From the IMG/VR virus record IMGVR_UViG_3300046660_000488, positions 62,001 to 126,000 of that record: 64,000 bases of DNA; one strand, written 5' to 3'. Shown here piece after piece: positions 3,683-61,580 of the stretch. The translations under genes were made by a program, and so were the position numbers. The stretch's first letter is position 1; each line of letters begins with the position of its first letter. The notes beneath the pieces are model-generated. The model did not search any database. It had not been told where the DNA came from and saw nothing but the letters and a program-made list of their open reading frames with translations.

Positions 3683-4876
3683 GTGGACTTGAAGAACGTC
3701 ATCACCCCCAGCCTGCAACGTCTTCACGACGTTCTGACCAAGAGGGACCACGGTCTGTGGTTCGTCGGCGGGATGGTGCGTGACCTTCTGCTTGGCATCG
3801 AGCCCAAGGACGTGGACCTGTGCACCACCGCGACGCCCGAGCAGATGATCGCCATCTTCACCGAAGAGGGCATCCGCTTCGAGCCGACCGGCCTTCAGCA
3901 CGGCACTCTGACCGTGATCATCGACGGCGAAGTCTACGAGATCACCACGCTGCGGATCGACACCGATCAGGACGGCCGCCACGCGACCGTGGTCTACACC
4001 ACAGACCTGATCCTCGATCTGGGCCGCCGCGACCTGACCATCAACGCGATGGCCATGGATTTCGACGGCAACCTGATCGACCCGTTCAACGGCGCCCAAG
4101 ACCTGACCGACAAGCGCATCCGCTTCGTCGGCAACCCAGATGACCGGATGCGGGAAGACTATCTCCGCATCCTGCGCTGGTTGCGCTTCCACGACCGGAT
4201 CGCCACCGGCACGCCGCTGGACGCCGATACCGTGGCTGCGGCGCGCCGCAACGCGGACGGTCTGCGGAAGATCAAGCGCGAGCGGGTCTGGATGGAAATG
4301 GCGAAGATCGTCTCGGGCAACAATGGCCCGCTGATGCTCCACAACATCTACGCCATGCAACTGGCCGACTGCATCGGCCTGCCTGCTCTGTATCGCCGCA
4401 CCGGGGACGTCTACCCGGACTGCCCGCCCGGCGGCATCGACCGCATGATGGACGTCGCCAAACTGTCCAGCAATCCCGTGACCCGGTTGGTCGCTGTGCT
4501 GAGGAACGAGGCGACGCACCTGCCCATCGCGTGGAAGTGGAGCGCTGAAGAGCGTGACCTGTGCATTTTCTTGGCCGAGCGGGTGGCGGCTCCCGGTTTC
4601 GGCTGGAAGCATATGCTGGCCGTCAGCGGCGTCCGTCGCGAATGGGTTCTGGAGTTGGCCTACCTGCGGGGAGGCCGCGAAGGTCTGTTCCAAGCCATCC
4701 GCGACTGGGACGTCCCGATGTTCCCGCTGAAGGGCGGCGACCTGATCGCGGAAAAGGGCTACAAGCCCGGCCCCATCGTCGGTGAGACCGTCAAGCACCT
4801 GAAGCACATCTGGGCGACGACCGAATATCTGGCGACCCGTGAAGAGCTTCTGAGGCTCGTCGTCACCAGTGCATAG
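3683..4876 (+). CDS. cca: CCA-adding tRNA nucleotidyltransferase (class II)
   Basis: VGGMVRDLLLG..PKDVDL, DLGRRDLTINAMA, EDYLRILRWLRF, ERVWMEMAK motifs. Confidence 0.93.
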   Translation: MDLKNVITPSLQRLHDVLTKRDHGLWFVGGMVRDLLLGIEPKDVDLCTTATPEQMIAIFTEEGIRFEPTGLQHGTLTVIIDGEVYEITTLRIDTDQDGRHATVVYTTDLILDLGRRDLTINAMAMDFDGNLIDPFNGAQDLTDKRIRFVGNPDDRMREDYLRILRWLRFHDRIATGTPLDADTVAAARRNADGLRKIKRERVWMEMAKIVSGNNGPLMLHNIYAMQLADCIGLPALYRRTGDVYPDCPPGGIDRMMDVAKLSSNPVTRLVAVLRNEATHLPIAWKWSAEERDLCIFLAERVAAPGFGWKHMLAVSGVRREWVLELAYLRGGREGLFQAIRDWDVPMFPLKGGDLIAEKGYKPGPIVGETVKHLKHIWATTEYLATREELLRLVVTSA

Positions 4877-7908: not shown

Positions 7909-8008
7909 AGTATAAACTTCCTCAAATAAGCAAAGTTGACCAGCACCTAAAAAGTATACTGGGAAGCTCGTTTCCGACACTTCGCTGGTATTTAGTTAAG
8001 TGCTGTGA

Positions 8009-41428: not shown

Positions 41429-41465
41429 TTTTCTTGTTGACGAGATTTCTCGCTCGACTATATGG

Positions 41466-41543
41466 TGACGATACAGCTTCGGCTGCTCGGGCTTCGGCCC
41501 CCACGTTCGCTTGGTGGCGCCCTAGCAGGCGAACGTGGCCCAA
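41466..41543 (+). ncRNA. Small structured RNA with two cUUCGg tetraloop hairpins
   Basis: CAGC-TTCG-GCTG, GGGC-TTCG-GCCC, CCACGTTCGC/GCGAACGTGG; TTGACG promoter immediately upstream. Confidence 0.5.
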
Positions 41544-41565
41544 AGTCGTTGACGAAAATAATTGT

Positions 41566-41594
41566 TGACGAGAAATAGGCGCTGTGACTAAATA
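41566..41594 (+). promoter_or_regulatory. Composite TTGACG / TAAATA promoter of the tRNA operon
   Basis: TTGACG-N17-TAAATA. Confidence 0.65.
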
Positions 41595-41691
41595 GAATTA
41601 TCAGCGGTGAGTGCGCGGGACTTTCAGTTACCCCGGATCACCGAAACTCAATCGCCCCAAGGGGCACAGACGACAGAAAGGGAATAGTGTT

Positions 41692-41784
41692 ATGACCACG
41701 ATCATCAGTTCACACTCGTATTGCTATTCCTCCAGCTATCATTCGGGTAGCGGGTTGCTGTCGTGCGAGGATTTCACGGGCTAA
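41692..41784 (+). CDS. Attenuator leader peptide (30 aa) MTTIISSHSYCYSSSYHSGSGLLSCEDFTG
   Basis: RBS GAAAGGGA; codons 6-18 are only Ser/His/Tyr/Cys, matching the downstream tRNA set; not in ORF track. Confidence 0.85.
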   Translation: MTTIISSHSYCYSSSYHSGSGLLSCEDFTG

Positions 41785-41811
41785 GGTCCAAGTCGAAATC
41801 ACCAAGTGAAC

Positions 41812-41884
41812 GCAACCCCGAGCACCCACACAGGTCCGGGGTTTTTCTTTGCCCCGTCGCCTGAAAAGGTTCCGGGGTTTTTTA
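41812..41884 (+). terminator. Tandem intrinsic terminators (attenuator) upstream of the tRNA cluster
   Basis: AACCCCG/CGGGGTT+TTTCTTT (41814-41850) and GCCCCG/CGGGGT+TTTTT (41851-41884); GCAACCC(41812-41818) can alternatively pair with GGGTTGC (41752-41758). Confidence 0.85.
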
Positions 41885-41932
41885 TTGTCTGAAAGGGTTA
41901 ACGAATGAAGTAAACAAGTCGATGTACTTTGC

Positions 41933-42024
41933 GGAGCCGTGGTAGAGAGGCTTATTGCACCCGTTTCGAAAGCGGGAGTGGTCGTAAAAACCCACCGAGG
42001 GTTCGAATCCCTCCGGCTCCGCCA
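41933..42024 (+). tRNA. tRNA-Ser(CGA)
   Basis: CCCGT-TTCGAAA-GCGGG, long variable arm, GGTTCGAATCC, G73-CCA. Confidence 0.95.
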
Positions 42025-42053
42025 AGTACATCGAATATCTGAAGCTCCTTCGC

Positions 42054-42143
42054 GGAGGGCGGGCAGGCCGGTAATGCAGCGCACTGCTAATGCGTACAGC
42101 CCTTCAAACGGCTGAGAGGGTTCGATTCCCTCGCCTTCCGCAA
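42054..42143 (+). tRNA. tRNA-Ser(GCT)
   Basis: GCGCA-CTGCTAA-TGCGT, long variable arm; 3' end GCAA (CCA not encoded). Confidence 0.92.
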
Positions 42144-42155
42144 AGGAGCTTCAAT

Positions 42156-42247
42156 GGAGCCGTGGCCGAGTGGCTTAAGGCGCTCGCTTGGAAAGCGAGT
42201 GTGGTCGTAAAAACCCACCGTGAGTTCGAATCTCACCGGCTCCGCCA
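42156..42247 (+). tRNA. tRNA-Ser(GGA)
   Basis: CTCGC-TTGGAAA-GCGAG; acceptor stem and variable arm identical to Ser(CGA). Confidence 0.95.
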
Positions 42248-42251
42248 ACAT

Positions 42252-42338
42252 GTTGTGATGACCGAGTGGTCGAAGGTGCGGGATTGCAACCCCCGTAGCG
42301 TAAAGCTCACGTGGGTTCGAATCCCACTCACAACTCCA
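42252..42338 (+). tRNA. tRNA-Cys(GCA) with atypical long variable arm
   Basis: CGGGA-TTGCAAC-CCCCG, U73-CCA, variable hairpin AGC-GTAAA-GCT. Confidence 0.88.
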
Positions 42339-42362
42339 AATACGCTCCGTGGTCTGTCTTGT

Positions 42363-42446
42363 GGGCAGGTGGGTGAGTGGCTGAAACCGGAGGACTGTAA
42401 CCCCTCTCTGAAAGGCGCGCTGGTTCGAATCCAGCTCTGCCTACCA
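42363..42446 (+). tRNA. tRNA-Tyr(GTA)
   Basis: GAGGA-CTGTAAC-CCCTC, variable arm, A73-CCA. Confidence 0.92.
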
Positions 42447-42478
42447 GTCAGACCACGGAGCAAAATGTTCTTTCTCAT

Positions 42479-42563
42479 GCACAGGTGGTGTGAGTGGTTT
42501 AAGCCGGGAGACTGTAAATCTCCTCCGAAAGGGACGCTGGTTCGAATCCAGCCCTGTGCACCA
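42479..42563 (+). tRNA. tRNA-Tyr(GTA), second copy
   Basis: GGAGA-CTGTAAA-TCTCC, A73-CCA. Confidence 0.94.
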
Positions 42564-42610
42564 GAAAGAACATTTGAGCCAGTCTAGCGAAAGCAAAGCT
42601 GGTTCATTTT

Positions 42611-42686
42611 GCTAGTGTAGCTCAGTTGGTAGAGCGTCGGCTTGTGGAGTCGATTGTCGCGGGTTCGAGCCCCGCCGCTAGTTCCA
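42611..42686 (+). tRNA. tRNA-His(GTG) lacking G-1 (G1.U72, U73)
   Basis: TCGGC-TTGTGGA-GTCGA; base -1 is T. Confidence 0.9.
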
Positions 42687-42739: not shown

Positions 42740-42970
42740 GTGCAAGTCCAGACCCACACGCAATGCGTTCTGCGTCGCGCTACGGGGTCCACTCAAGTCT
42801 CGTGGATTCCGACCAAATTCGCTCAGGAAGGTCGTGTTCTCGAACTTGATGAAGATGGCCGTGCAAACGGCTGGACTGTCGCGGAAGTCTGGGGCTTCAA
42901 CATGCCCTCCAAGATCGTCTTCGAGCGTGAACGCGATTTCAAGAACCACCGCAAGGCGACCGACGTATGA
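42740..42970 (+). CDS. Hypothetical protein
   Basis: AGGAG RBS, GTG start. Confidence 0.65.
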   Translation: MQVQTHTQCVLRRATGSTQVSWIPTKFAQEGRVLELDEDGRANGWTVAEVWGFNMPSKIVFERERDFKNHRKATDV

Positions 42971-43134
42971 GCAAGCCCGACAAGAAAAAGGCCAAGCTCC
43001 AATCGGCGATCACCGCGCTAGAGGCCAAGCTGCAACAGTCCCTCGGGAAGAAGGACTCGCGCACCGTTGAAATCGACGTCCCCGGCACTCTGCGTCAGAT
43101 TGCCGTCCTGAAGAAGCAATTGGAGGCCGTGTAA
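42967..43134 (+). CDS. Small basic coiled-coil protein (55 aa), not in ORF track
   Basis: ATGA and TAATG overlaps with both neighbours. Confidence 0.7.
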   Translation: MSKPDKKKAKLQSAITALEAKLQQSLGKKDSRTVEIDVPGTLRQIAVLKKQLEAV

Positions 43135-43412
43135 TGGCTGGCCGGATCGAAACGTATACGCACAGCGACAAGTCGGTTCCCAACAAGGGAGGCGCCATTG
43201 TCGCAGTCCGCTCGCAGACCGATTTCGCGGCCCGCACGGACGAGTTCATAGCCTTCGCCCAGAAGGTCGCCAAGATGTCGTTCGCGGCTCAGGCAACCAA
43301 CTGGGAGGACGTCACGGCCGCCTTCCCCGATTTGGAAGATGAGCGTGTCGCCCTGACGAAGGCGATCAAGGAAAAGGTCGAGATCGACCAGATCGTCATC
43401 CTGACGATCTAA
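43134..43412 (+). CDS. tsf: Minimal elongation factor Ts core subdomain (92 aa)
   Basis: GRIETYTH...GGAIVAVRSQTDFAARTDEFIAFAQKVA matches EF-Ts G.I.SYIH...GVLVEVNCETDFVARNEEF..LA; KEKVEI matches GENIKV. Confidence 0.8.
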   Translation: MAGRIETYTHSDKSVPNKGGAIVAVRSQTDFAARTDEFIAFAQKVAKMSFAAQATNWEDVTAAFPDLEDERVALTKAIKEKVEIDQIVILTI

Positions 43413-43416
43413 GAGG

Positions 43417-43524
43417 TCTGGGTTGACTGAGTGGTCATAAGGTTGATCGGATACTAGAGAGCGGAGGTGGGTGTACCGGCCCAACACCAAGGCTCACGTG
43501 GGTTCGAATCCCACACCCGGAACA
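43417..43524 (+). tRNA. Aberrant tRNA-like gene with intact acceptor/D/T arms and an expanded, unpaired anticodon region
   Basis: TCTGGGT/ACCCGGA acceptor; T arm GTGGGTTCGAATCCCAC identical to the Cys tRNA at 42252; no canonical anticodon stem. Confidence 0.6.
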
Positions 43525-43541
43525 TTTACGAGGACAAGGAC

Positions 43542-44160
43542 ATGTTGAGAGGCACGAGAATTCTGGAAGGCGACGAAGCCGTCGCCTACGCTAAGGTGAT
43601 CGACACGCTGCGGGTGTGTCTTCATTGAAGCTGGCTTCGAGGAAGTGATCCTTCCGGCGATCTGGGAACAGCAGACCTTCATTGATAAGGCTGGCCCCGA
43701 GATCGTCAACCAGATGTGGGCATTCAAGGACAAGGGCGACCGCCCTGTCTGCCTCATCCCCGAAGTCACCGGTCTCGTGCAAGAGACTTGGCGGGATACA
43801 TGGTCGAAGACGTGCAAGTCCAAGCGCATCTTCTACGTCTCCCGCTGCTACCGCTACGAACGCCCCCAAGCTGGGCGCTACCGTGAATTCACACAGTTCG
43901 GGGTAGAGTTGCTTGGGGACGTTCCCGGCGGGACCGAAGAGGTCAAAGGTCTGCTGATCGCCGTGCTCGACAAGCTCGGCCTCAGTTACCGGTTCAGCGA
44001 CGCGGTCAAGCGAGGCTTGACCTACTATGTCGAGGACGGCTTCGAGGTCGAATGTGAGAGCTTGGGCGCCCAGAAGCAGATCGCCGGTGGCGGTCGATAC
44101 GCGGAAGGGATCGGGTGGGCCATTGGTGTGGACCGCCTGCTGCTCGCGCTCTCGAAGTAG
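43542..44160 (+). CDS. hisS: Catalytic-domain-only histidyl-tRNA synthetase, made via +1 frameshift at 43620-43625 (205 aa)
   Basis: Frame-0 MLRGTR...TLRVCL joins frame+1 IEAGFEEVILP, gapless against HisRS motif 1; motif 2 RYERPQAGRYREFTQ; motif 3 GGGRY..GWAIGVDRL; no anticodon-binding domain. Confidence 0.88.
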
Positions 44161-44167
44161 TTTCTAT

Positions 44168-44243
44168 GGTGGTGGTAGTTCAGCGGTAGAACGCCAGACT
44201 GTGACTCTGGATGTCGCGGGTTCGATCCCCGTCCATCACCCCA
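44168..44243 (+). tRNA. tRNA-His(GTG) with canonical G-1:C73
   Basis: G-GTGGTGG/CCATCAC-C-CCA; CCAGA-CTGTGAC-TCTGG. Confidence 0.95.
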
Positions 44244-44337
44244 AATTCTGGTTGACCAAATACCCCGGCGGGTGTTAGGTTGGCCAATCGATCAACTCCT
44301 CACGCTTGTATTTCATTGCAGCAAGAGGAGAAGAAAG

Positions 44338-44589
44338 ATGCAAGTTTTCGTACTGACCGAGTCGCATCACATCGCGTACGAGGGAACGTGGACCGTAGTC
44401 CAAGGCGTCTATCTGACGCGGGATGAAGCCTTCGCGAAAGTGAAGGAACGCCTGCCAAAGGAAGCCGACCATGGGCAAGAAAAGTTCATGATCGTTCGGA
44501 GCCGTAGTGCAGACGAGCAGTGGTTCAGGCTACGTGAAATGACCGTGGGCGAGTACCAAGGTCGTGACGTTCTGTTCTATGAAGACTAA
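44338..44589 (+). CDS. Hypothetical protein
   Basis: GAGGAG RBS; start MQVFVL. Confidence 0.7.
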   Translation: MQVFVLTESHHIAYEGTWTVVQGVYLTRDEAFAKVKERLPKEADHGQEKFMIVRSRSADEQWFRLREMTVGEYQGRDVLFYED

Positions 44590-44641
44590 CGAGTGGGCGG
44601 GCTTCGGTCCGCCCATTCCACCCGCCGGACCGACGTGATAC

Positions 44642-44732
44642 GGAGGGTTGGCCGAGCGGTAAGGCTCTGGTCTTGAAAACCAGTGACAGGGTGACGAGCC
44701 CTGCGGGGGTTCGATCCCCTCACCCTCCGCCA
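44642..44732 (+). tRNA. tRNA-Ser(TGA)
   Basis: CTGGT-CTTGAAA-ACCAG, long variable arm, G73-CCA. Confidence 0.95.
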
Positions 44733-44994: not shown

Positions 44995-45699
44995 TCAGAT
45001 TTCGTCGCTATCCGGATCGAAGGTCTGGTTGAAGACCGACTTGATCTGCTGCGGATAGAACGCGATCCACCAGTCAGTCGGCTTGTACCCACGCGATCCG
45101 CCATCGGCCATGGTGTCGATCAGATGGATGCCGTCATAGCCCTCGCTGATCAGTTGCTGCTGGAACGCGGCGACGTCTTCGGTCTTGGATTTCACTCCGT
45201 CCGGCAGATGGTTCATGACGCGCGTCCAAGCATCGTTGGACAGCATTTCCTTCTGCTTGGCGTCGTAGGCCTTCCGGATGCGGTAGTAGTCGTTGTGGGG
45301 ATCGTTCTGGTCGAGGGTCTTGAGCTTTTGGGCCAGATCGCGAAGCTCTTCGAGGTCTTCGTCCCAGAGCCAATCGCCGCTCATCGCCAGCGGGCGCTTG
45401 ATCGACAGGAAGCACGGCTTGACGTTGGCGCCGGTCGCAGGCCCGGTCTCCGGGTGATAGCCCGCGAAATAGTTCGCCGTGTCCGGGCTGACGTCGAACC
45501 AGAACCCGAGGCGGTTGAAACCAGACCCGGCCGAGCCGAAGGCATGGTGCTTGAAGGTGGCGAAGTCTCGGAACGTGCCGTGGTAGCAGACCAGCGGCTG
45601 ACCTTGCTTGTCCACGACCTTAGAGCCCTTGAACCACGCTTGGAACGCAGGGTTCTCGGCGACGTTGGCTCGTTCCATGAGATTGATGTATTCGCGCAT
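44995..45699 (-). CDS. ADP-ribosyltransferase-like protein (ART-PolyVal type), late
   Basis: AFQAWFKGSKVVD..G.PLVCYHGT, GFWF, VKPCFLSIKRP, GYDGI, IAFYPQQIKS; TAAATA 5 nt upstream of ATG. Confidence 0.75.
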   Translation of the reverse strand: MREYINLMERANVAENPAFQAWFKGSKVVDKQGQPLVCYHGTFRDFATFKHHAFGSAGSGFNRLGFWFDVSPDTANYFAGYHPETGPATGANVKPCFLSIKRPLAMSGDWLWDEDLEELRDLAQKLKTLDQNDPHNDYYRIRKAYDAKQKEMLSNDAWTRVMNHLPDGVKSKTEDVAAFQQQLISEGYDGIHLIDTMADGGSRGYKPTDWWIAFYPQQIKSVFNQTFDPDSDEI

Positions 45700-45896
45700 G
45701 GTCGTATTTATGACCAAGCAAAAGGCTCCAGAACCGGTGGGGACCGTTCTGGAGCCTTCCGGGGATTATCCGGGGACCAGCGCCGTGTGTTGTTCAACGC
45801 TGGCCTGACGAGGCTCCCACGGGCCTCTGTGTCGGTCAAACGAAAACACCCGGCCCATTGCTGGACCGGGTGCAAGATTTCGTGACTGGCAGAGGC

Positions 45897-47998: not shown

Positions 47999-48073
47999 TG
48001 GCGCCTTCAGCCGGGCTCGAACCGGCGACCTACAGATTTAGAGTCTGCTGCTCTACCGCTGAGCTATGAAGGC
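47999..48073 (-). tRNA. Amber suppressor tRNA (CTA), G73
   Basis: GCCTTCA/TGAAGGC, GCAGA-CTCTAAA-TCTGT, GGTTCGAGCC, CCA encoded. Confidence 0.92.
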
Positions 48074-48079
48074 GTCCTT

Positions 48080-48155
48080 TGGTGATCACAGTCGGGCTCG
48101 AACCGACGACCCGCAGATTTAGAGTCCGCTGCTCTACCAACTGAGCTATGCAATC
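48080..48155 (-). tRNA. Amber suppressor tRNA (CTA), A73
   Basis: GATTGCA/TGTGATC, GCGGA-CTCTAAA-TCTGC, CCA encoded; TTGACC promoter upstream. Confidence 0.92.
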
Positions 48156-48208
48156 AGACCAAAGACGATCAAACATCTATCAGGCCATTCCAATCTGGTC
48201 AACCAAAA

Positions 48209-60884: not shown

Positions 60885-61270
60885 TGGCTCGCACGACACC
60901 AACCGCTCCGCAATTTCGTTCAACGCAGACGAAGTTGTTCCATGCGACGAAAGCCGCGCTCGACGAAGTCAACGCCAAGATGACCGTCGCGTACGAGGGC
61001 ATGATCGAGAACACCATGTCGCGACGCCACGTGTCGCTGCTGTTCCAGAAGCCGGACCGTGAGCAGGCCGAGAAAATGATCCAGCGGACCACGCCCGGAT
61101 ACTGGGATTACTGGCGGCTCGAAAATGACCAAGCGAAGCTGCACAATTTCTTCCTGTCCCTCGACAACAACATCATCGAGGAAGAGGTCGCGGTTGGTGA
61201 GGATATCCTGCGGATCATCCGCATCCATTCTGATATCCGGTTCCTCGGAATTGTCGAAGAAAGCACTTGA
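60884..61270 (+). CDS. Hypothetical protein
   Basis: TGATG overlap. Confidence 0.65.
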   Translation: MARTTPTAPQFRSTQTKLFHATKAALDEVNAKMTVAYEGMIENTMSRRHVSLLFQKPDREQAEKMIQRTTPGYWDYWRLENDQAKLHNFFLSLDNNIIEEEVAVGEDILRIIRIHSDIRFLGIVEEST

Positions 61271-61322
61271 CGGATATAATCTGGTGCACTAAATGTAGGT
61301 CATCGATTGAGAGATCGGTTGT

Positions 61323-61400
61323 GACGCGGTGTCCCGAGTCGGCTAGGTACGTGGTCCGCAAGATCATGGCACGGTGGTTCAAGTCCATCCCGCGTCACCA
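61323..61400 (+). tRNA. Atypical tRNA with GCA anticodon (C33, A73)
   Basis: GACGCGG/CCGCGTC, GTGGT-CCGCAAG-ATCAT, GGTTCAAGTCC, CCA. Confidence 0.65.
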
Positions 61401-61420
61401 ATCTCTCTCAGCGATTTTAT

Positions 61421-61497
61421 GACGGCATGGCAGAGTGACTATGCACCAGATTGCAAATCTGGATTAGGGGTCGGTTAAAATCCCCCTGTCGTCTCCA
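61421..61497 (+). tRNA. tRNA-Cys(GCA) with degenerate T arm
   Basis: GACGGCA/TGTCGTC, CCAGA-TTGCAAA-TCTGG, U73-CCA; T loop lacks TTCG. Confidence 0.7.
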
Positions 61498-61504
61498 AGG
61501 TTTC

Positions 61505-61580
61505 GGGGCCTTAGCTCAGTTGGTAGAGCGCCTGCTTTGCAAGCAGGATGTCATCGGTTCGAGTCCGATAGGCTCCACCA
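61505..61580 (+). tRNA. tRNA-Ala(TGC)
   Basis: CCTGC-TTTGCAA-GCAGG, G3.U70, CCA. Confidence 0.96.

What the first reader, a model, noticed from the sequence alone, without database searches (positions are those of the whole stretch)
41566..41930. Unannotated Ser/His/Tyr/Cys leader-peptide attenuator controlling a tRNA operon for exactly those amino acids
Seen: after a TTGACG-N17-TAAATA promoter, an RBS (GAAAGGGA) precedes a 30-codon ORF at 41692-41784, MTTIISSHSYCYSSSYHSGSGLLSCEDFTG. Codons 6-18 (AGT TCA CAC TCG TAT TGC TAT TCC TCC AGC TAT CAT TCG) are 13 consecutive Ser/His/Tyr/Cys codons. The downstream operon carries tRNAs for exactly these four amino acids, and the Ser codons used cover all four Ser isoacceptors encoded (CGA, GCT, GGA, TGA). 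GGGTTGC (41752-41758, in the ORF) can pair with GCAACCC (41812-41818), the 5' arm of the first of two tandem terminators (41814-41850, 41851-41884). A pause-type hairpin GCTATC/GGTAGC lies at 41735-41751. Established: this is the architecture of his/trp/thr ribosome-mediated attenuators, which normally control amino-acid biosynthesis or synthetase genes. Inference: the phage senses loss of charged Ser/His/Tyr/Cys tRNA, for example from host tRNA-cleaving defences or starvation, and only then transcribes replacement tRNAs. I know of no described attenuator that regulates a phage tRNA cluster.
Basis: partly seen in the sequence, partly recalled or inferred. Interest (0 to 1): 0.97.

Follow-up and report, generated by a model that had tools for sequence, protein, structure and literature searches.

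The report
Leader-peptide attenuator controlling phage tRNA genes
A giant phage places a tiny test gene, made of the codons read by the tRNAs encoded just downstream, in front of two transcription stop signals, so it probably makes those tRNAs only when ribosomes run short of them; the same design recurs in other giant phages and appears undescribed.

Summary
Window 41565-41885 holds a promoter, a ribosome-binding site and a 30-codon ORF with 13 consecutive Ser/His/Tyr/Cys codons. Two intrinsic terminators follow, then tRNAs Ser(CGA, GCU, GGA), Cys, Tyr x2, His, and further on His and Ser(UGA).

The attenuator reading is strongly supported in silico. Four orthologous leaders from related jumbo phages keep the codon run, not the peptide tail. 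They also keep the anti-antiterminator / antiterminator / terminator layout, with the leader stop codon in the apical loop inside the antiterminator. One ortholog has no Tyr codon, and its operon has no tRNA-Tyr.

I then found ten further units with other specificities: Leu/Tyr/Pro/Met/Cys, His, Trp/Arg/His, His/Lys/Phe/Trp, Ser/Arg, Tyr/Glu and Ile/Gly/Ala. They include two GC-poor huge phages with a different promoter type. In each unit the run mirrors the downstream tRNA set (exact permutation test, 1 of 40,320).

The same folding script recovers the known E. coli thrL antiterminator. No Rfam family matched, and ten full-text literature searches found nothing comparable.

The mechanism class is known; the target (tRNA genes) and the per-tRNA codon design are new. 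Nothing has been tested experimentally, and the physiological trigger is unknown.

The parts
41437..41466 (+). Upstream promoter-like site P1 (TTGACG-N18-TATGGT), following the T-run at 41429 that ends the preceding gene
41565..41594 (+). Promoter P2: TTGACG, then 17 nt to CTAAAT or 18 nt to TAAATA. The same motif precedes all orthologous leaders
41602..41666 (+). 5' untranslated region with two hairpins. A hairpin between transcription start and ribosome-binding site is present in every ortholog
41676..41683 (+). Shine-Dalgarno-like GAAAGGGA, 8 nt before the ATG
41692..41784 (+). Leader ORF, 30 codons plus TAA
41707..41745 (+). Sensor run: 13 consecutive Ser/His/Tyr/Cys codons, each readable by a tRNA of the operon. 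All four Ser isoacceptor classes are sampled
41731..41754 (+). Segment 1:2 hairpin (anti-antiterminator or pause hairpin). It pairs the end of the codon run with the start of the antiterminator strand
41745..41827 (+). Antiterminator (2:3). Strand 41745-41758 pairs with 41812-41827, which is the whole 5' arm of T1. dG -33.7 kcal/mol, z = -2.7 against shuffles
41770..41800 (+). Inner hairpin of the antiterminator. The leader stop codon (41782-41784) lies in its apical tetraloop UAAG
41814..41850 (+). Intrinsic terminator T1 (3:4), -14.1 kcal/mol, with U-tract
41833..41861 (+). Relay pairing 4:5. The 3' arm of T1 pairs with the 5' arm of T2 (-14.2 kcal/mol) when T1 is prevented from forming
41851..41885 (+). 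Intrinsic terminator T2 (5:6), -16.2 kcal/mol, with U-tract
41933..42686 (+). Seven tRNA genes: Ser(CGA), Ser(GCU), Ser(GGA), Cys(GCA), Tyr(GUA) x2, His(GUG). No promoter-like site lies between T2 and the first tRNA
42740..43412 (+). Three small ORFs of unknown function inside the same presumed transcription unit (42740-42970, 42967-43134, 43134-43412)
43543..44160 (+). HisRS-like catalytic-core gene in two reading frames (43543-43629, then the +1 frame to 44160)
44169..44732 (+). tRNA-His(GUG) 44169-44243, a small ORF, and tRNA-Ser(UGA) 44642-44732. This is the presumed distal end of the operon. No + strand terminator-like site was found between 42686 and 44732

Best explanation
This is a trp/his/thr-type ribosome-mediated transcription attenuator, but the genes it gates are the phage's own tRNA genes.

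Proposed sequence of events:
1. Transcription starts at a sigma-70-like promoter (41565-41594).
2. A ribosome loads on the 30-codon leader. It must read 13 consecutive codons that sample every tRNA species of the operon: four Ser isoacceptor classes, His, Tyr and Cys.
3. If all these aminoacyl-tRNAs are plentiful, the ribosome runs through segment 2 (41745-41758). It reaches the stop codon, which sits in the apical loop at the centre of the antiterminator. The antiterminator therefore cannot close. T1 and T2 form and transcription ends at about 41850 or 41885.
4. If any one of these aminoacyl-tRNAs is scarce, the ribosome stalls inside the run (best at codons about 6-14). It melts the 1:2 hairpin and leaves segment 2 free.
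5. Segment 2 pairs with segment 3 (41812-41827), the 5' arm of T1, as soon as that arm is made.
6. The orphaned 3' arm of T1 then pairs with the 5' arm of T2, so T2 fails as well.
7. RNA polymerase reads into nine tRNA genes and a HisRS-like gene.
8. The new tRNAs, once charged, relieve the stall. This closes a negative feedback loop on tRNA supply.

Shown here: all the sequence elements, their conservation, the covariation of codon run with tRNA set, and the predicted alternative structures.

Inferred: translation of the leader, coupling between ribosome and polymerase, terminator efficiency, co-transcription of the distal His and Ser(UGA) genes, and the physiological trigger.
For: (1) Anatomy is confirmed.

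(2) Four independent orthologs were found: L003, L004 (same as L005), L037 and L073 (same as L067). All keep promoter, 5' hairpin, start, run and one or two terminators. The peptide tail after the run is not conserved. Substitutions inside the run stay within Ser/His/Tyr/Cys.

(3) Covariation. L004's leader has no Tyr codon. Its operon has Ser x4, His x2 and Cys, but no Tyr.

(4) Ten more units with other codon sets sit before matching tRNA sets. These are L009 x2, L017, L080 x3 and L081 x4. In L009 the eight codons CTT TAC CCA ATG CCG TGC TAT CCC map one-to-one onto tRNAs Leu GAG, Tyr, Pro UGG, Met, Pro CGG, Cys and Pro GGG.

(5) The true leader-operon assignment is the unique optimum among 40,320 permutations. 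Run probabilities range from 2e-8 to 2e-2.

(6) In all 15 units the segment just after the run pairs with the terminator's 5' arm when a ribosome is placed on the run. The pairing is lost when the ribosome is placed further on or at the stop. For the seven antiterminators tested, z = -2.6 to -5.0, with 0-3 of 200 shuffles folding as well.

(7) The same script recovers the textbook thrL antiterminator.

(8) The relay pairing between tandem terminators is conserved in all three two-terminator versions, at -13 to -15 kcal/mol.

(9) No promoter-like site lies between terminator and first tRNA, so tRNA expression must pass the terminators.

(10) Negative controls. 24 kb of the tRNA-rich region of phage T5 gave no candidates. 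Another tRNA cluster in the window has the same promoter type with no leader.
Against: - There are no experimental data of any kind.
- Equilibrium folding of the complete leader RNA keeps the terminator wherever the ribosome is placed in L004 and L037, and only partly loses it in L003. The model therefore depends on kinetic, co-transcriptional folding, as it does for classical attenuators.
- With a ribosome at the stop codon, segment 2 lies 24-36 nt behind it and is not physically covered. Exclusion of the antiterminator then rests on the ribosome sitting inside the would-be loop.
- In L003 and L073 the 1:2 hairpin competes only with the outer 4 bp of the antiterminator. An untranslated leader might therefore read through.
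- The L009 His leader has essentially no 5' untranslated region and no Shine-Dalgarno sequence.
- A sequence-based alignment gave no usable consensus structure, so there are no formal covariation statistics for individual base pairs.
- The cultured relative Phosso showed no such unit in 103 kb of tRNA-rich DNA.
- Host tRNAs read the same codons, so the quantity sensed is the total pool, not the phage tRNAs alone.
Confidence: 0.82

Rival explanations
1. Same attenuator, different purpose. It reports host amino-acid starvation or general translational stress and acts as a timing or physiology switch for a block of early genes. It is not a sensor of tRNA supply or of tRNA-cleaving defence.
For: A stalled ribosome cannot tell a missing amino acid from a missing tRNA. 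The unit also carries protein genes (42740-44160). Classical attenuators respond to starvation (thrL control).
Against: Making more tRNA does not help when the amino acid itself is missing. The codon set follows the tRNA set down to isoacceptors: three Pro codons for three Pro tRNAs in L009, and GAA plus GAG for Glu UUC and CUC in L080. It differs from operon to operon within one genome. That is unnecessary for a general stress sensor.
Confidence: 0.1
2. The small ORF encodes a functional Ser/Cys/His/Tyr-rich peptide, such as a metal-binding or modified peptide. The terminators simply end its transcript, and the tRNAs are expressed by constitutive leak-through or from another start.
For: The ORF has a ribosome-binding site and is conserved in five genomes. 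Cys/Ser-rich cores occur in modified peptides (general knowledge).
Against: Only the run is conserved, and substitutions within it stay in the codon set. The C-terminal half changes freely while keeping RNA pairing. No modification enzymes are nearby. Leaders with quite different compositions precede other tRNA sets and match them. No promoter-like site lies after the terminators.
Confidence: 0.04
3. Leader translation controls processing or stability of the tRNA precursor, or Rho-dependent polarity. It does not control the choice between intrinsic terminator and antiterminator.
For: Structured 5' leaders and ribosome position can influence RNase access. Equilibrium folds always favour the terminators.
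Against: Every unit has a canonical GC-rich hairpin plus U-tract. The 5' arm of that hairpin is exactly the partner of the post-run segment. The tandem-terminator relay only makes sense for termination control.
Confidence: 0.03
4. Coincidence: a chance low-complexity ORF next to ordinary terminators.
For: Short ORFs abound in GC-rich DNA.
Against: Run probability is about 2e-8. The unit is conserved in five genomes. Fifteen units match their tRNA sets, with 1 of 40,320 permutations doing as well.
Confidence: 0.01

Closest known systems
Leader-peptide transcription attenuators of amino-acid biosynthetic operons (E. coli thrL, hisL, trpL, leuL, ilvL, pheL)
   Same: A short translated leader with a run of regulatory codons. 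A 1:2 / 2:3 / 3:4 set of alternative hairpins ending in an intrinsic terminator. The ribosome's position selects the fold. The thrL control behaves identically in the same script. As in thr (Thr and Ile) and ilv (Ile, Leu, Val), several amino acids are sensed at once. The his leader also uses a relay of successive alternative hairpins (general knowledge).
   Different: The regulated genes are tRNA genes, not biosynthetic enzymes. The element is phage-encoded. The run samples four or five amino acids and individual isoacceptors. The leader stop codon lies in the apical loop inside the antiterminator instead of at its 5' strand. Two tandem terminators are linked by a 4:5 relay. No sequence or structure match to any Rfam leader family.
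pheST (pheM leader) attenuator
   Same: An attenuator that controls a component of the translation apparatus in response to charged tRNA (general knowledge).
   Different: It regulates the synthetase, for one amino acid, in a cellular genome. Here the product is the tRNA itself.
T-box riboswitches
   Same: Transcription antitermination that responds to tRNA status and controls translation-related genes.
   Different: T-boxes bind uncharged tRNA directly through a specifier codon and the T-box motif, with no leader peptide. No T-box hit was found here, and a translated leader is present.
Short-ORF charged-tRNA sensors outside biosynthesis: Salmonella mgtCBR leader ORFs (PMC3641672) and polycysteine leaderless sORFs in mycobacteria (bioRxiv 10.1101/834739)
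   Same: Short ORFs whose codon content makes downstream expression depend on particular charged tRNAs. Both papers were retrieved.
   Different: Their targets are virulence, transport or Cys-metabolism genes, with one amino acid each. None gates tRNA genes.
Promoter-level (stringent and growth-rate) control of bacterial tRNA operons
   Same: Also adjusts tRNA output to translational demand (general knowledge).
   Different: It acts at initiation through ppGpp and DksA and is global. It is not specific to the tRNA species encoded.

Membership tests
Ribosome-mediated (leader-peptide) transcription attenuator | Short translatable ORF in the 5' leader of the transcript | tested here: met
   ORF 41692-41784 with GAAAGGGA 8 nt upstream and a promoter about 100 nt upstream. 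The ATG start is conserved in 4 orthologs.
Ribosome-mediated (leader-peptide) transcription attenuator | Cluster of regulatory codons far above chance | tested here: met
   13 consecutive codons from a 12-codon set, P about 2e-8. Runs of 11-14 codons in the orthologs.
Ribosome-mediated (leader-peptide) transcription attenuator | Intrinsic terminator between the leader ORF and the first regulated gene, with no promoter after it | tested here: met
   T1 at -14.1 and T2 at -16.2 kcal/mol, each with a U-tract. No promoter-like site at 41885-41932.
Ribosome-mediated (leader-peptide) transcription attenuator | Antiterminator that is mutually exclusive with the terminator. It is available when a ribosome stalls on the regulatory codons and unavailable when the ribosome goes on to the stop | tested here: met
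   In silico only: (15 units). z = -2.6 to -5.0 for the seven tested. Positive control thrL.
Ribosome-mediated (leader-peptide) transcription attenuator | 1:2 anti-antiterminator or pause hairpin | tested here: inconclusive
   Clear in the window (41731-41754), L004, L037 and L080-SR. In L003 and L073 it competes with only the outer 4 bp of the antiterminator.
Ribosome-mediated (leader-peptide) transcription attenuator | Regulated genes make or charge the amino acid named by the codons (classical scope) | tested here: not met
   The downstream genes are tRNAs plus a HisRS-like fragment. This is the point on which it is a new variant.
Ribosome-mediated (leader-peptide) transcription attenuator | Read-through responds to charged-tRNA level in vivo or in vitro | not testable with these tools
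   Needs reporter fusions, coupled in vitro transcription-translation, or Term-seq.
Curated Rfam leader families (His_leader, Thr_leader, Trp_leader, Leu_leader and others) | Match to the family covariance model | tested here: not met
   No hit at gathering score in 38000-64000. At E<=5 in 41540-41935 there was only a weak terminator-like match to an unrelated sRNA family.
T-box riboswitch | Specifier loop and T-box sequence, with no leader peptide | tested here: not met
   No T-box match. A translated leader is present.
RiPP precursor peptide | Conserved N-terminal recognition leader, a C-terminal core, and adjacent modification enzymes | tested here: not met
   The run is N-terminal and the C-terminal half is not conserved. 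The neighbours are tRNAs, small ORFs and a HisRS-like gene.

The most novel reading that the evidence does not exclude
Huge phages may run an autonomous, codon-resolved tRNA homeostasis network. Each tRNA operon would carry its own 'test strip': a leader ORF assembled from the very codons its tRNAs read, down to isoacceptor level. Each operon would then switch on only when its own tRNA species become limiting, for instance after host tRNA pools decay or are cleaved during infection. These sensors would evolve modularly, by co-variation of codon run and tRNA content, across phages of unrelated hosts. In the window's clade a second layer may exist: a conserved +1 frameshift at a His codon or stop in the co-transcribed HisRS-like gene.
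Probability: 0.55. Interest if true: 0.93.

Novelty: new variant of a known kind. Interest (0 to 1): 0.88.

Why it matters
Why phages carry tRNA genes is a long-standing question. Proposed answers include codon-usage compensation, replacement of decaying host tRNAs, and escape from tRNA-cleaving defences.

A built-in sensor that turns each phage tRNA operon on only when its own codons are read slowly has three consequences:
- It shows that the phage treats tRNA supply as a regulated variable.
- It gives a direct experimental handle: the leader reports which tRNAs become limiting during infection.
- It extends leader-peptide attenuation to a new class of target, RNA genes of the translation apparatus, and to viruses.

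The units are compact, at about 250-320 nt. Their specificity seems to be set simply by the codon run. They could therefore serve as portable reporters of the charging state of chosen tRNAs. The recurrence in phages with sigma-70-type promoters and in phages with TAnnTTTG-type promoters suggests a widespread principle that annotation has missed.

Tried and rejected
- Whole-leader equilibrium folding with ribosome masks. Terminators dominate in most homologs, so this is uninformative for a kinetic switch. I replaced it by folding only the RNA that exists before the terminator's 3' arm is made, validated on thrL.
- MAFFT plus RNAalifold on the five antiterminators. The sequences are too divergent and the alignment does not respect the helices, so no per-pair covariation statistics could be obtained. 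I did not build a covariance model.
- Nucleotide searches of the phage collection with the locus. Only generic tRNA hits came back.
- Pattern scans: MFVSSS-type start and the L009 run. Neither gave new true hits.
- The single metagenome scan added one new ortholog only.
- First pass for cognate runs before every tRNA cluster in L003-L018 using ATG ORFs. Most clusters have no leader, so the device is used for some operons only.
- Cultured phages: Sinorhizobium phage Phosso, 103 kb scanned, and T5, 24 kb scanned. No unit was found. The remaining 366 kb of Phosso was not scanned.
- Considered and rejected: RiPP precursor or functional peptide, pyrBI-type ribosome blocking of the terminator (the stop codon is 27-37 nt upstream, too far), and T-box.

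Full report
WHAT IS THERE. The window is part of IMGVR_UViG_3300046660_000488, a 578-kb phage contig (window position = contig position minus 62000). It encodes rIIA, rIIB and both topoisomerase II subunits. Its nearest isolates are Sinorhizobium phage Phosso and Agrobacterium phage Atu_ph07, at about 50% amino-acid identity.

- a TTGACG -35 hexamer (41565-41570), followed 17-18 nt later by CTAAAT/TAAATA;
- a structured 5' leader;
- GAAAGGGA 8 nt before an ATG;
- a 30-codon ORF (41692-41784) whose codons 6-18 are all Ser, His, Tyr or Cys;
- two hairpin-plus-U-tract terminators, T1 at 41814-41850 (-14.1 kcal/mol) and T2 at 41851-41885 (-16.2 kcal/mol);
- 48 nt later, tRNAs Ser(CGA), Ser(GCU), Ser(GGA), Cys, Tyr, Tyr and His.

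After three small ORFs and a HisRS-like gene come a second tRNA-His and tRNA-Ser(UGA). No terminator-like site on the + strand separates them. Every codon of the run is readable by one of these tRNAs. A chance run of this kind has a probability of about 2e-8.

ORTHOLOGS. I used the linked HisRS-like protein and short DNA patterns from the run. This gave four further versions in other jumbo-phage contigs: L003, L004 (same as L005, L042, L058), L037 and L073 (same as L067).

All have the same promoter motif, a 5' hairpin, a start codon, a run of 11-14 Ser/His/Tyr/Cys codons, and one or two terminators. The peptide after the run is unrelated between versions. Replacements inside the run stay within the four amino acids, for example His to Tyr at one position. 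This is what is expected if codons and RNA pairing are under selection, not the peptide.

One informative difference stands out. L004's leader has Ser, His and Cys codons but no Tyr. Its operon encodes Ser x4, His x2 and Cys, with no tRNA-Tyr. The Cys gene was missed by ARAGORN and found with Rfam.

STRUCTURE. Equilibrium folding of the entire leader is dominated by the terminators, as it would be for classical attenuators. I therefore folded only the RNA that exists before the terminator's 3' arm is made, with the ribosome footprint removed.

In all five orthologs the same design appears:
- A small hairpin joins the last run codons to the start of segment 2. In the window this is 41731-41754.
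- A long stem-loop forms whose outer helix pairs segment 2 (41745-41758) with the complete 5' arm of T1 (41812-41827).
- Nested inside it is a hairpin with the leader stop codon in its apical loop (41782-41784 in loop UAAG).

The long stem-loop forms when the ribosome is placed on the run. It disappears when the ribosome is placed further on or at the stop.

The helices use different sequences in different genomes. For example, GGAACC/GGUUCC in L003 becomes GGGACC/GGUCUC in L073.

Seven such antiterminator segments are each more stable than dinucleotide shuffles, with z = -2.6 to -5.0 and 0-3 of 200 shuffles as good. Applied to E. coli thrL, the same script returns the textbook antiterminator and the same dependence on ribosome position.

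Where there are two terminators (window, L003, L073), the freed 3' arm of T1 pairs with the 5' arm of T2 at -13 to -15 kcal/mol. One antiterminator can thereby disable both.

OTHER SPECIFICITIES. I scanned every locus in hand for a terminator within 400 nt upstream of a tRNA gene, with a short ORF just before it. This gave ten more units.

In L009 (a 608-kb relative):
- A leader contains CTT TAC CCA ATG CCG TGC TAT CCC. It precedes tRNAs Tyr, Pro(UGG), Leu(GAG), Pro(CGG), Met, Cys, Pro(GGG) and Cys. That is one codon per tRNA species, including all three Pro isoacceptors.
- A His-rich leader precedes tRNA-His and the HisRS-like gene.

In L017, a Trp/Arg/His run precedes Trp, His x2 and Arg x4.

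In two published uncultured huge phages with about 31% GC (LR745206.1 as L080, LR756502.1 as L081):
- His/Lys/Phe(/Trp) runs precede His, Phe, Trp and Lys tRNAs.
- Ser/Arg runs precede Arg and Ser tRNAs.
- Tyr/Glu runs precede Glu(UUC), Glu(CUC) and Tyr tRNAs.
- An Ile/Gly/Ala run precedes Ile, Gly and Ala tRNAs.

Their upstream regions carry a TAnnTTTG-type motif and no Shine-Dalgarno sequence. This points to a different host group (inference from general knowledge of Bacteroidota promoters).

In every one of these units the segment after the run pairs with the terminator's 5' arm, with the same dependence on ribosome position.

For eight non-homologous leader/operon pairs, the true pairing gives the highest total of cognate codons of all 40,320 permutations.

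Controls:
- 24 kb of the tRNA-rich region of phage T5 gave no candidate.
- 103 kb of phage Phosso gave none.
- In the window a second tRNA cluster (Cys, Cys, Ala at 61323) has the same promoter type placed directly in front of it, without a leader.

The device is therefore used for some operons only.

MECHANISM. The best-supported reading is classical ribosome-mediated attenuation applied to tRNA genes.
- A ribosome that reads the run quickly goes on to the stop codon at the heart of the antiterminator. The terminators form.
- A ribosome that waits for any one of the sampled aminoacyl-tRNAs leaves segment 2 free to capture the terminator's 5' arm. Polymerase then reads into the tRNA genes.
- The tRNA products in turn remove the stall, giving negative feedback.

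What is shown: the elements, their conservation, the codon/tRNA covariation and the predicted folds. What is inferred: translation, coupling, termination efficiency and the trigger.

Sequence cannot tell which of three triggers applies: defence-induced tRNA cleavage, decay of host tRNAs after host shut-off, or simple supply-and-demand balancing. Amino-acid starvation as the main signal seems less likely. More tRNA would not help in that case, and the isoacceptor-level match would be unnecessary.

COMPARISON AND NOVELTY. The element works like the thr/his/trp attenuators and meets their structural criteria in silico. It differs in several ways:
- its target is tRNA genes;
- it is viral;
- its run is assembled from many amino acids and isoacceptors;
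- the stop codon is placed inside the antiterminator;
- tandem terminators are linked by a relay.

It matches no Rfam family. Ten full-text searches found nothing on attenuators before tRNA genes. Targeted reading of a jumbo-phage genomics review and of the huge-phage paper also found nothing. The library does not cover most subscription journals, so an older description cannot be excluded. I rate it a new variant of a known kind.

LIMITS.
- No experiment has been done.
- There are no formal per-pair covariation statistics.
- The 1:2 hairpin is weak in two orthologs.
- Co-transcription of the distal tRNAs is inferred.
- No cultivable carrier has been identified yet.

Noticed in passing
window 43543-44160 (+); also L003, L004, L006, L008, L009, L010, L012 around position 8001, and Phosso L074 about 4030-4686: The HisRS-like gene of the operon is split between two reading frames. 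A 28-codon piece matching the HisRS N-terminus ends at a stop codon. The catalytic core (Pfam tRNA-synt_His) continues in the +1 frame. The junction is always NUU CAY followed by UGA, or by CGA..UGA, in ten phages whose protein is 62-81% identical to the window's. Phosso is among them, and there only the downstream part is annotated. This looks like a conserved programmed +1 frameshift with prfB-like logic, possibly sensitive to His-tRNA. The protein has about 200 residues and lacks an anticodon-binding domain. One literature search found nothing..
   Followed up: partly
window 42252-42338 (+): tRNA-Cys(GCA) has a 13-nt variable arm (class II shape) and discriminator U73. That shape is unusual for tRNA-Cys. 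Similar long tRNA-Cys genes occur in L037 (86 nt) and L073. L004 has a normal 73-nt one.
   Followed up: partly
window 43417-43522 (+): tRNA-like element (Rfam tRNA 27.9 bits, just under the threshold of 29). The acceptor, D and T arms are good but the anticodon region is 45 nt long. It could be an intron-containing or degenerate tRNA. It lies immediately before the HisRS-like gene.
   Followed up: partly
window 47999-48155 (-): Two tandem tRNAs with anticodon CUA (amber suppressors, labelled Pyl by ARAGORN), with a promoter-like TGGTTGACCAGA at 48194-48205. Such tRNAs also occur in L003, L012 and Phosso. This raises the question of whether TAG is read through in some phage genes.
   Followed up: no
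window 61267-61580 (+): The same promoter motif (TTGACG..CTAAAT) sits directly before tRNAs Cys, Cys and Ala, with no leader or terminator. The phage therefore has both gated and ungated tRNA clusters.
   Followed up: partly
window 41437-41560 (+): A second promoter-like site (TTGACG-N18-TATGGT) lies 128 nt upstream of the leader promoter. It is followed by a long GC-rich hairpin at about 41495-41545. This may be a tandem promoter or a small RNA.
   Followed up: no
window 44995-45717 (-): A 240-residue protein with an ART-PolyVal ADP-ribosyltransferase domain is encoded convergently, right after the tRNA operon.
   Followed up: no
L004 6690-7130 and L004 5940-6177: In this ortholog an HNH-endonuclease-like ORF is inserted between tRNA genes of the gated operon. 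A 79-codon ORF also lies between the terminator and the first tRNA.
   Followed up: no
L080 16740-16832, 18020-18082, 39400-39481; L081 equivalents: Leaders in the two GC-poor huge phages (LR745206.1, LR756502.1) are preceded by a conserved AAATTAGG ... TATATTTGTA motif (TAnnTTTG type). They have no Shine-Dalgarno sequence. This suggests a host with Bacteroidota-type promoters and shows that the attenuator design is not tied to one host group.
   Followed up: partly
L075, L076 (Phosso 380000-469473): The cultured relative Phosso carries dozens of tRNA genes interleaved with small ORFs. It also carries IF-3, ribosomal protein S21, ribosome recycling factor and ThrRS. No leader-terminator unit was found in the 103 kb scanned.
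   Followed up: partly
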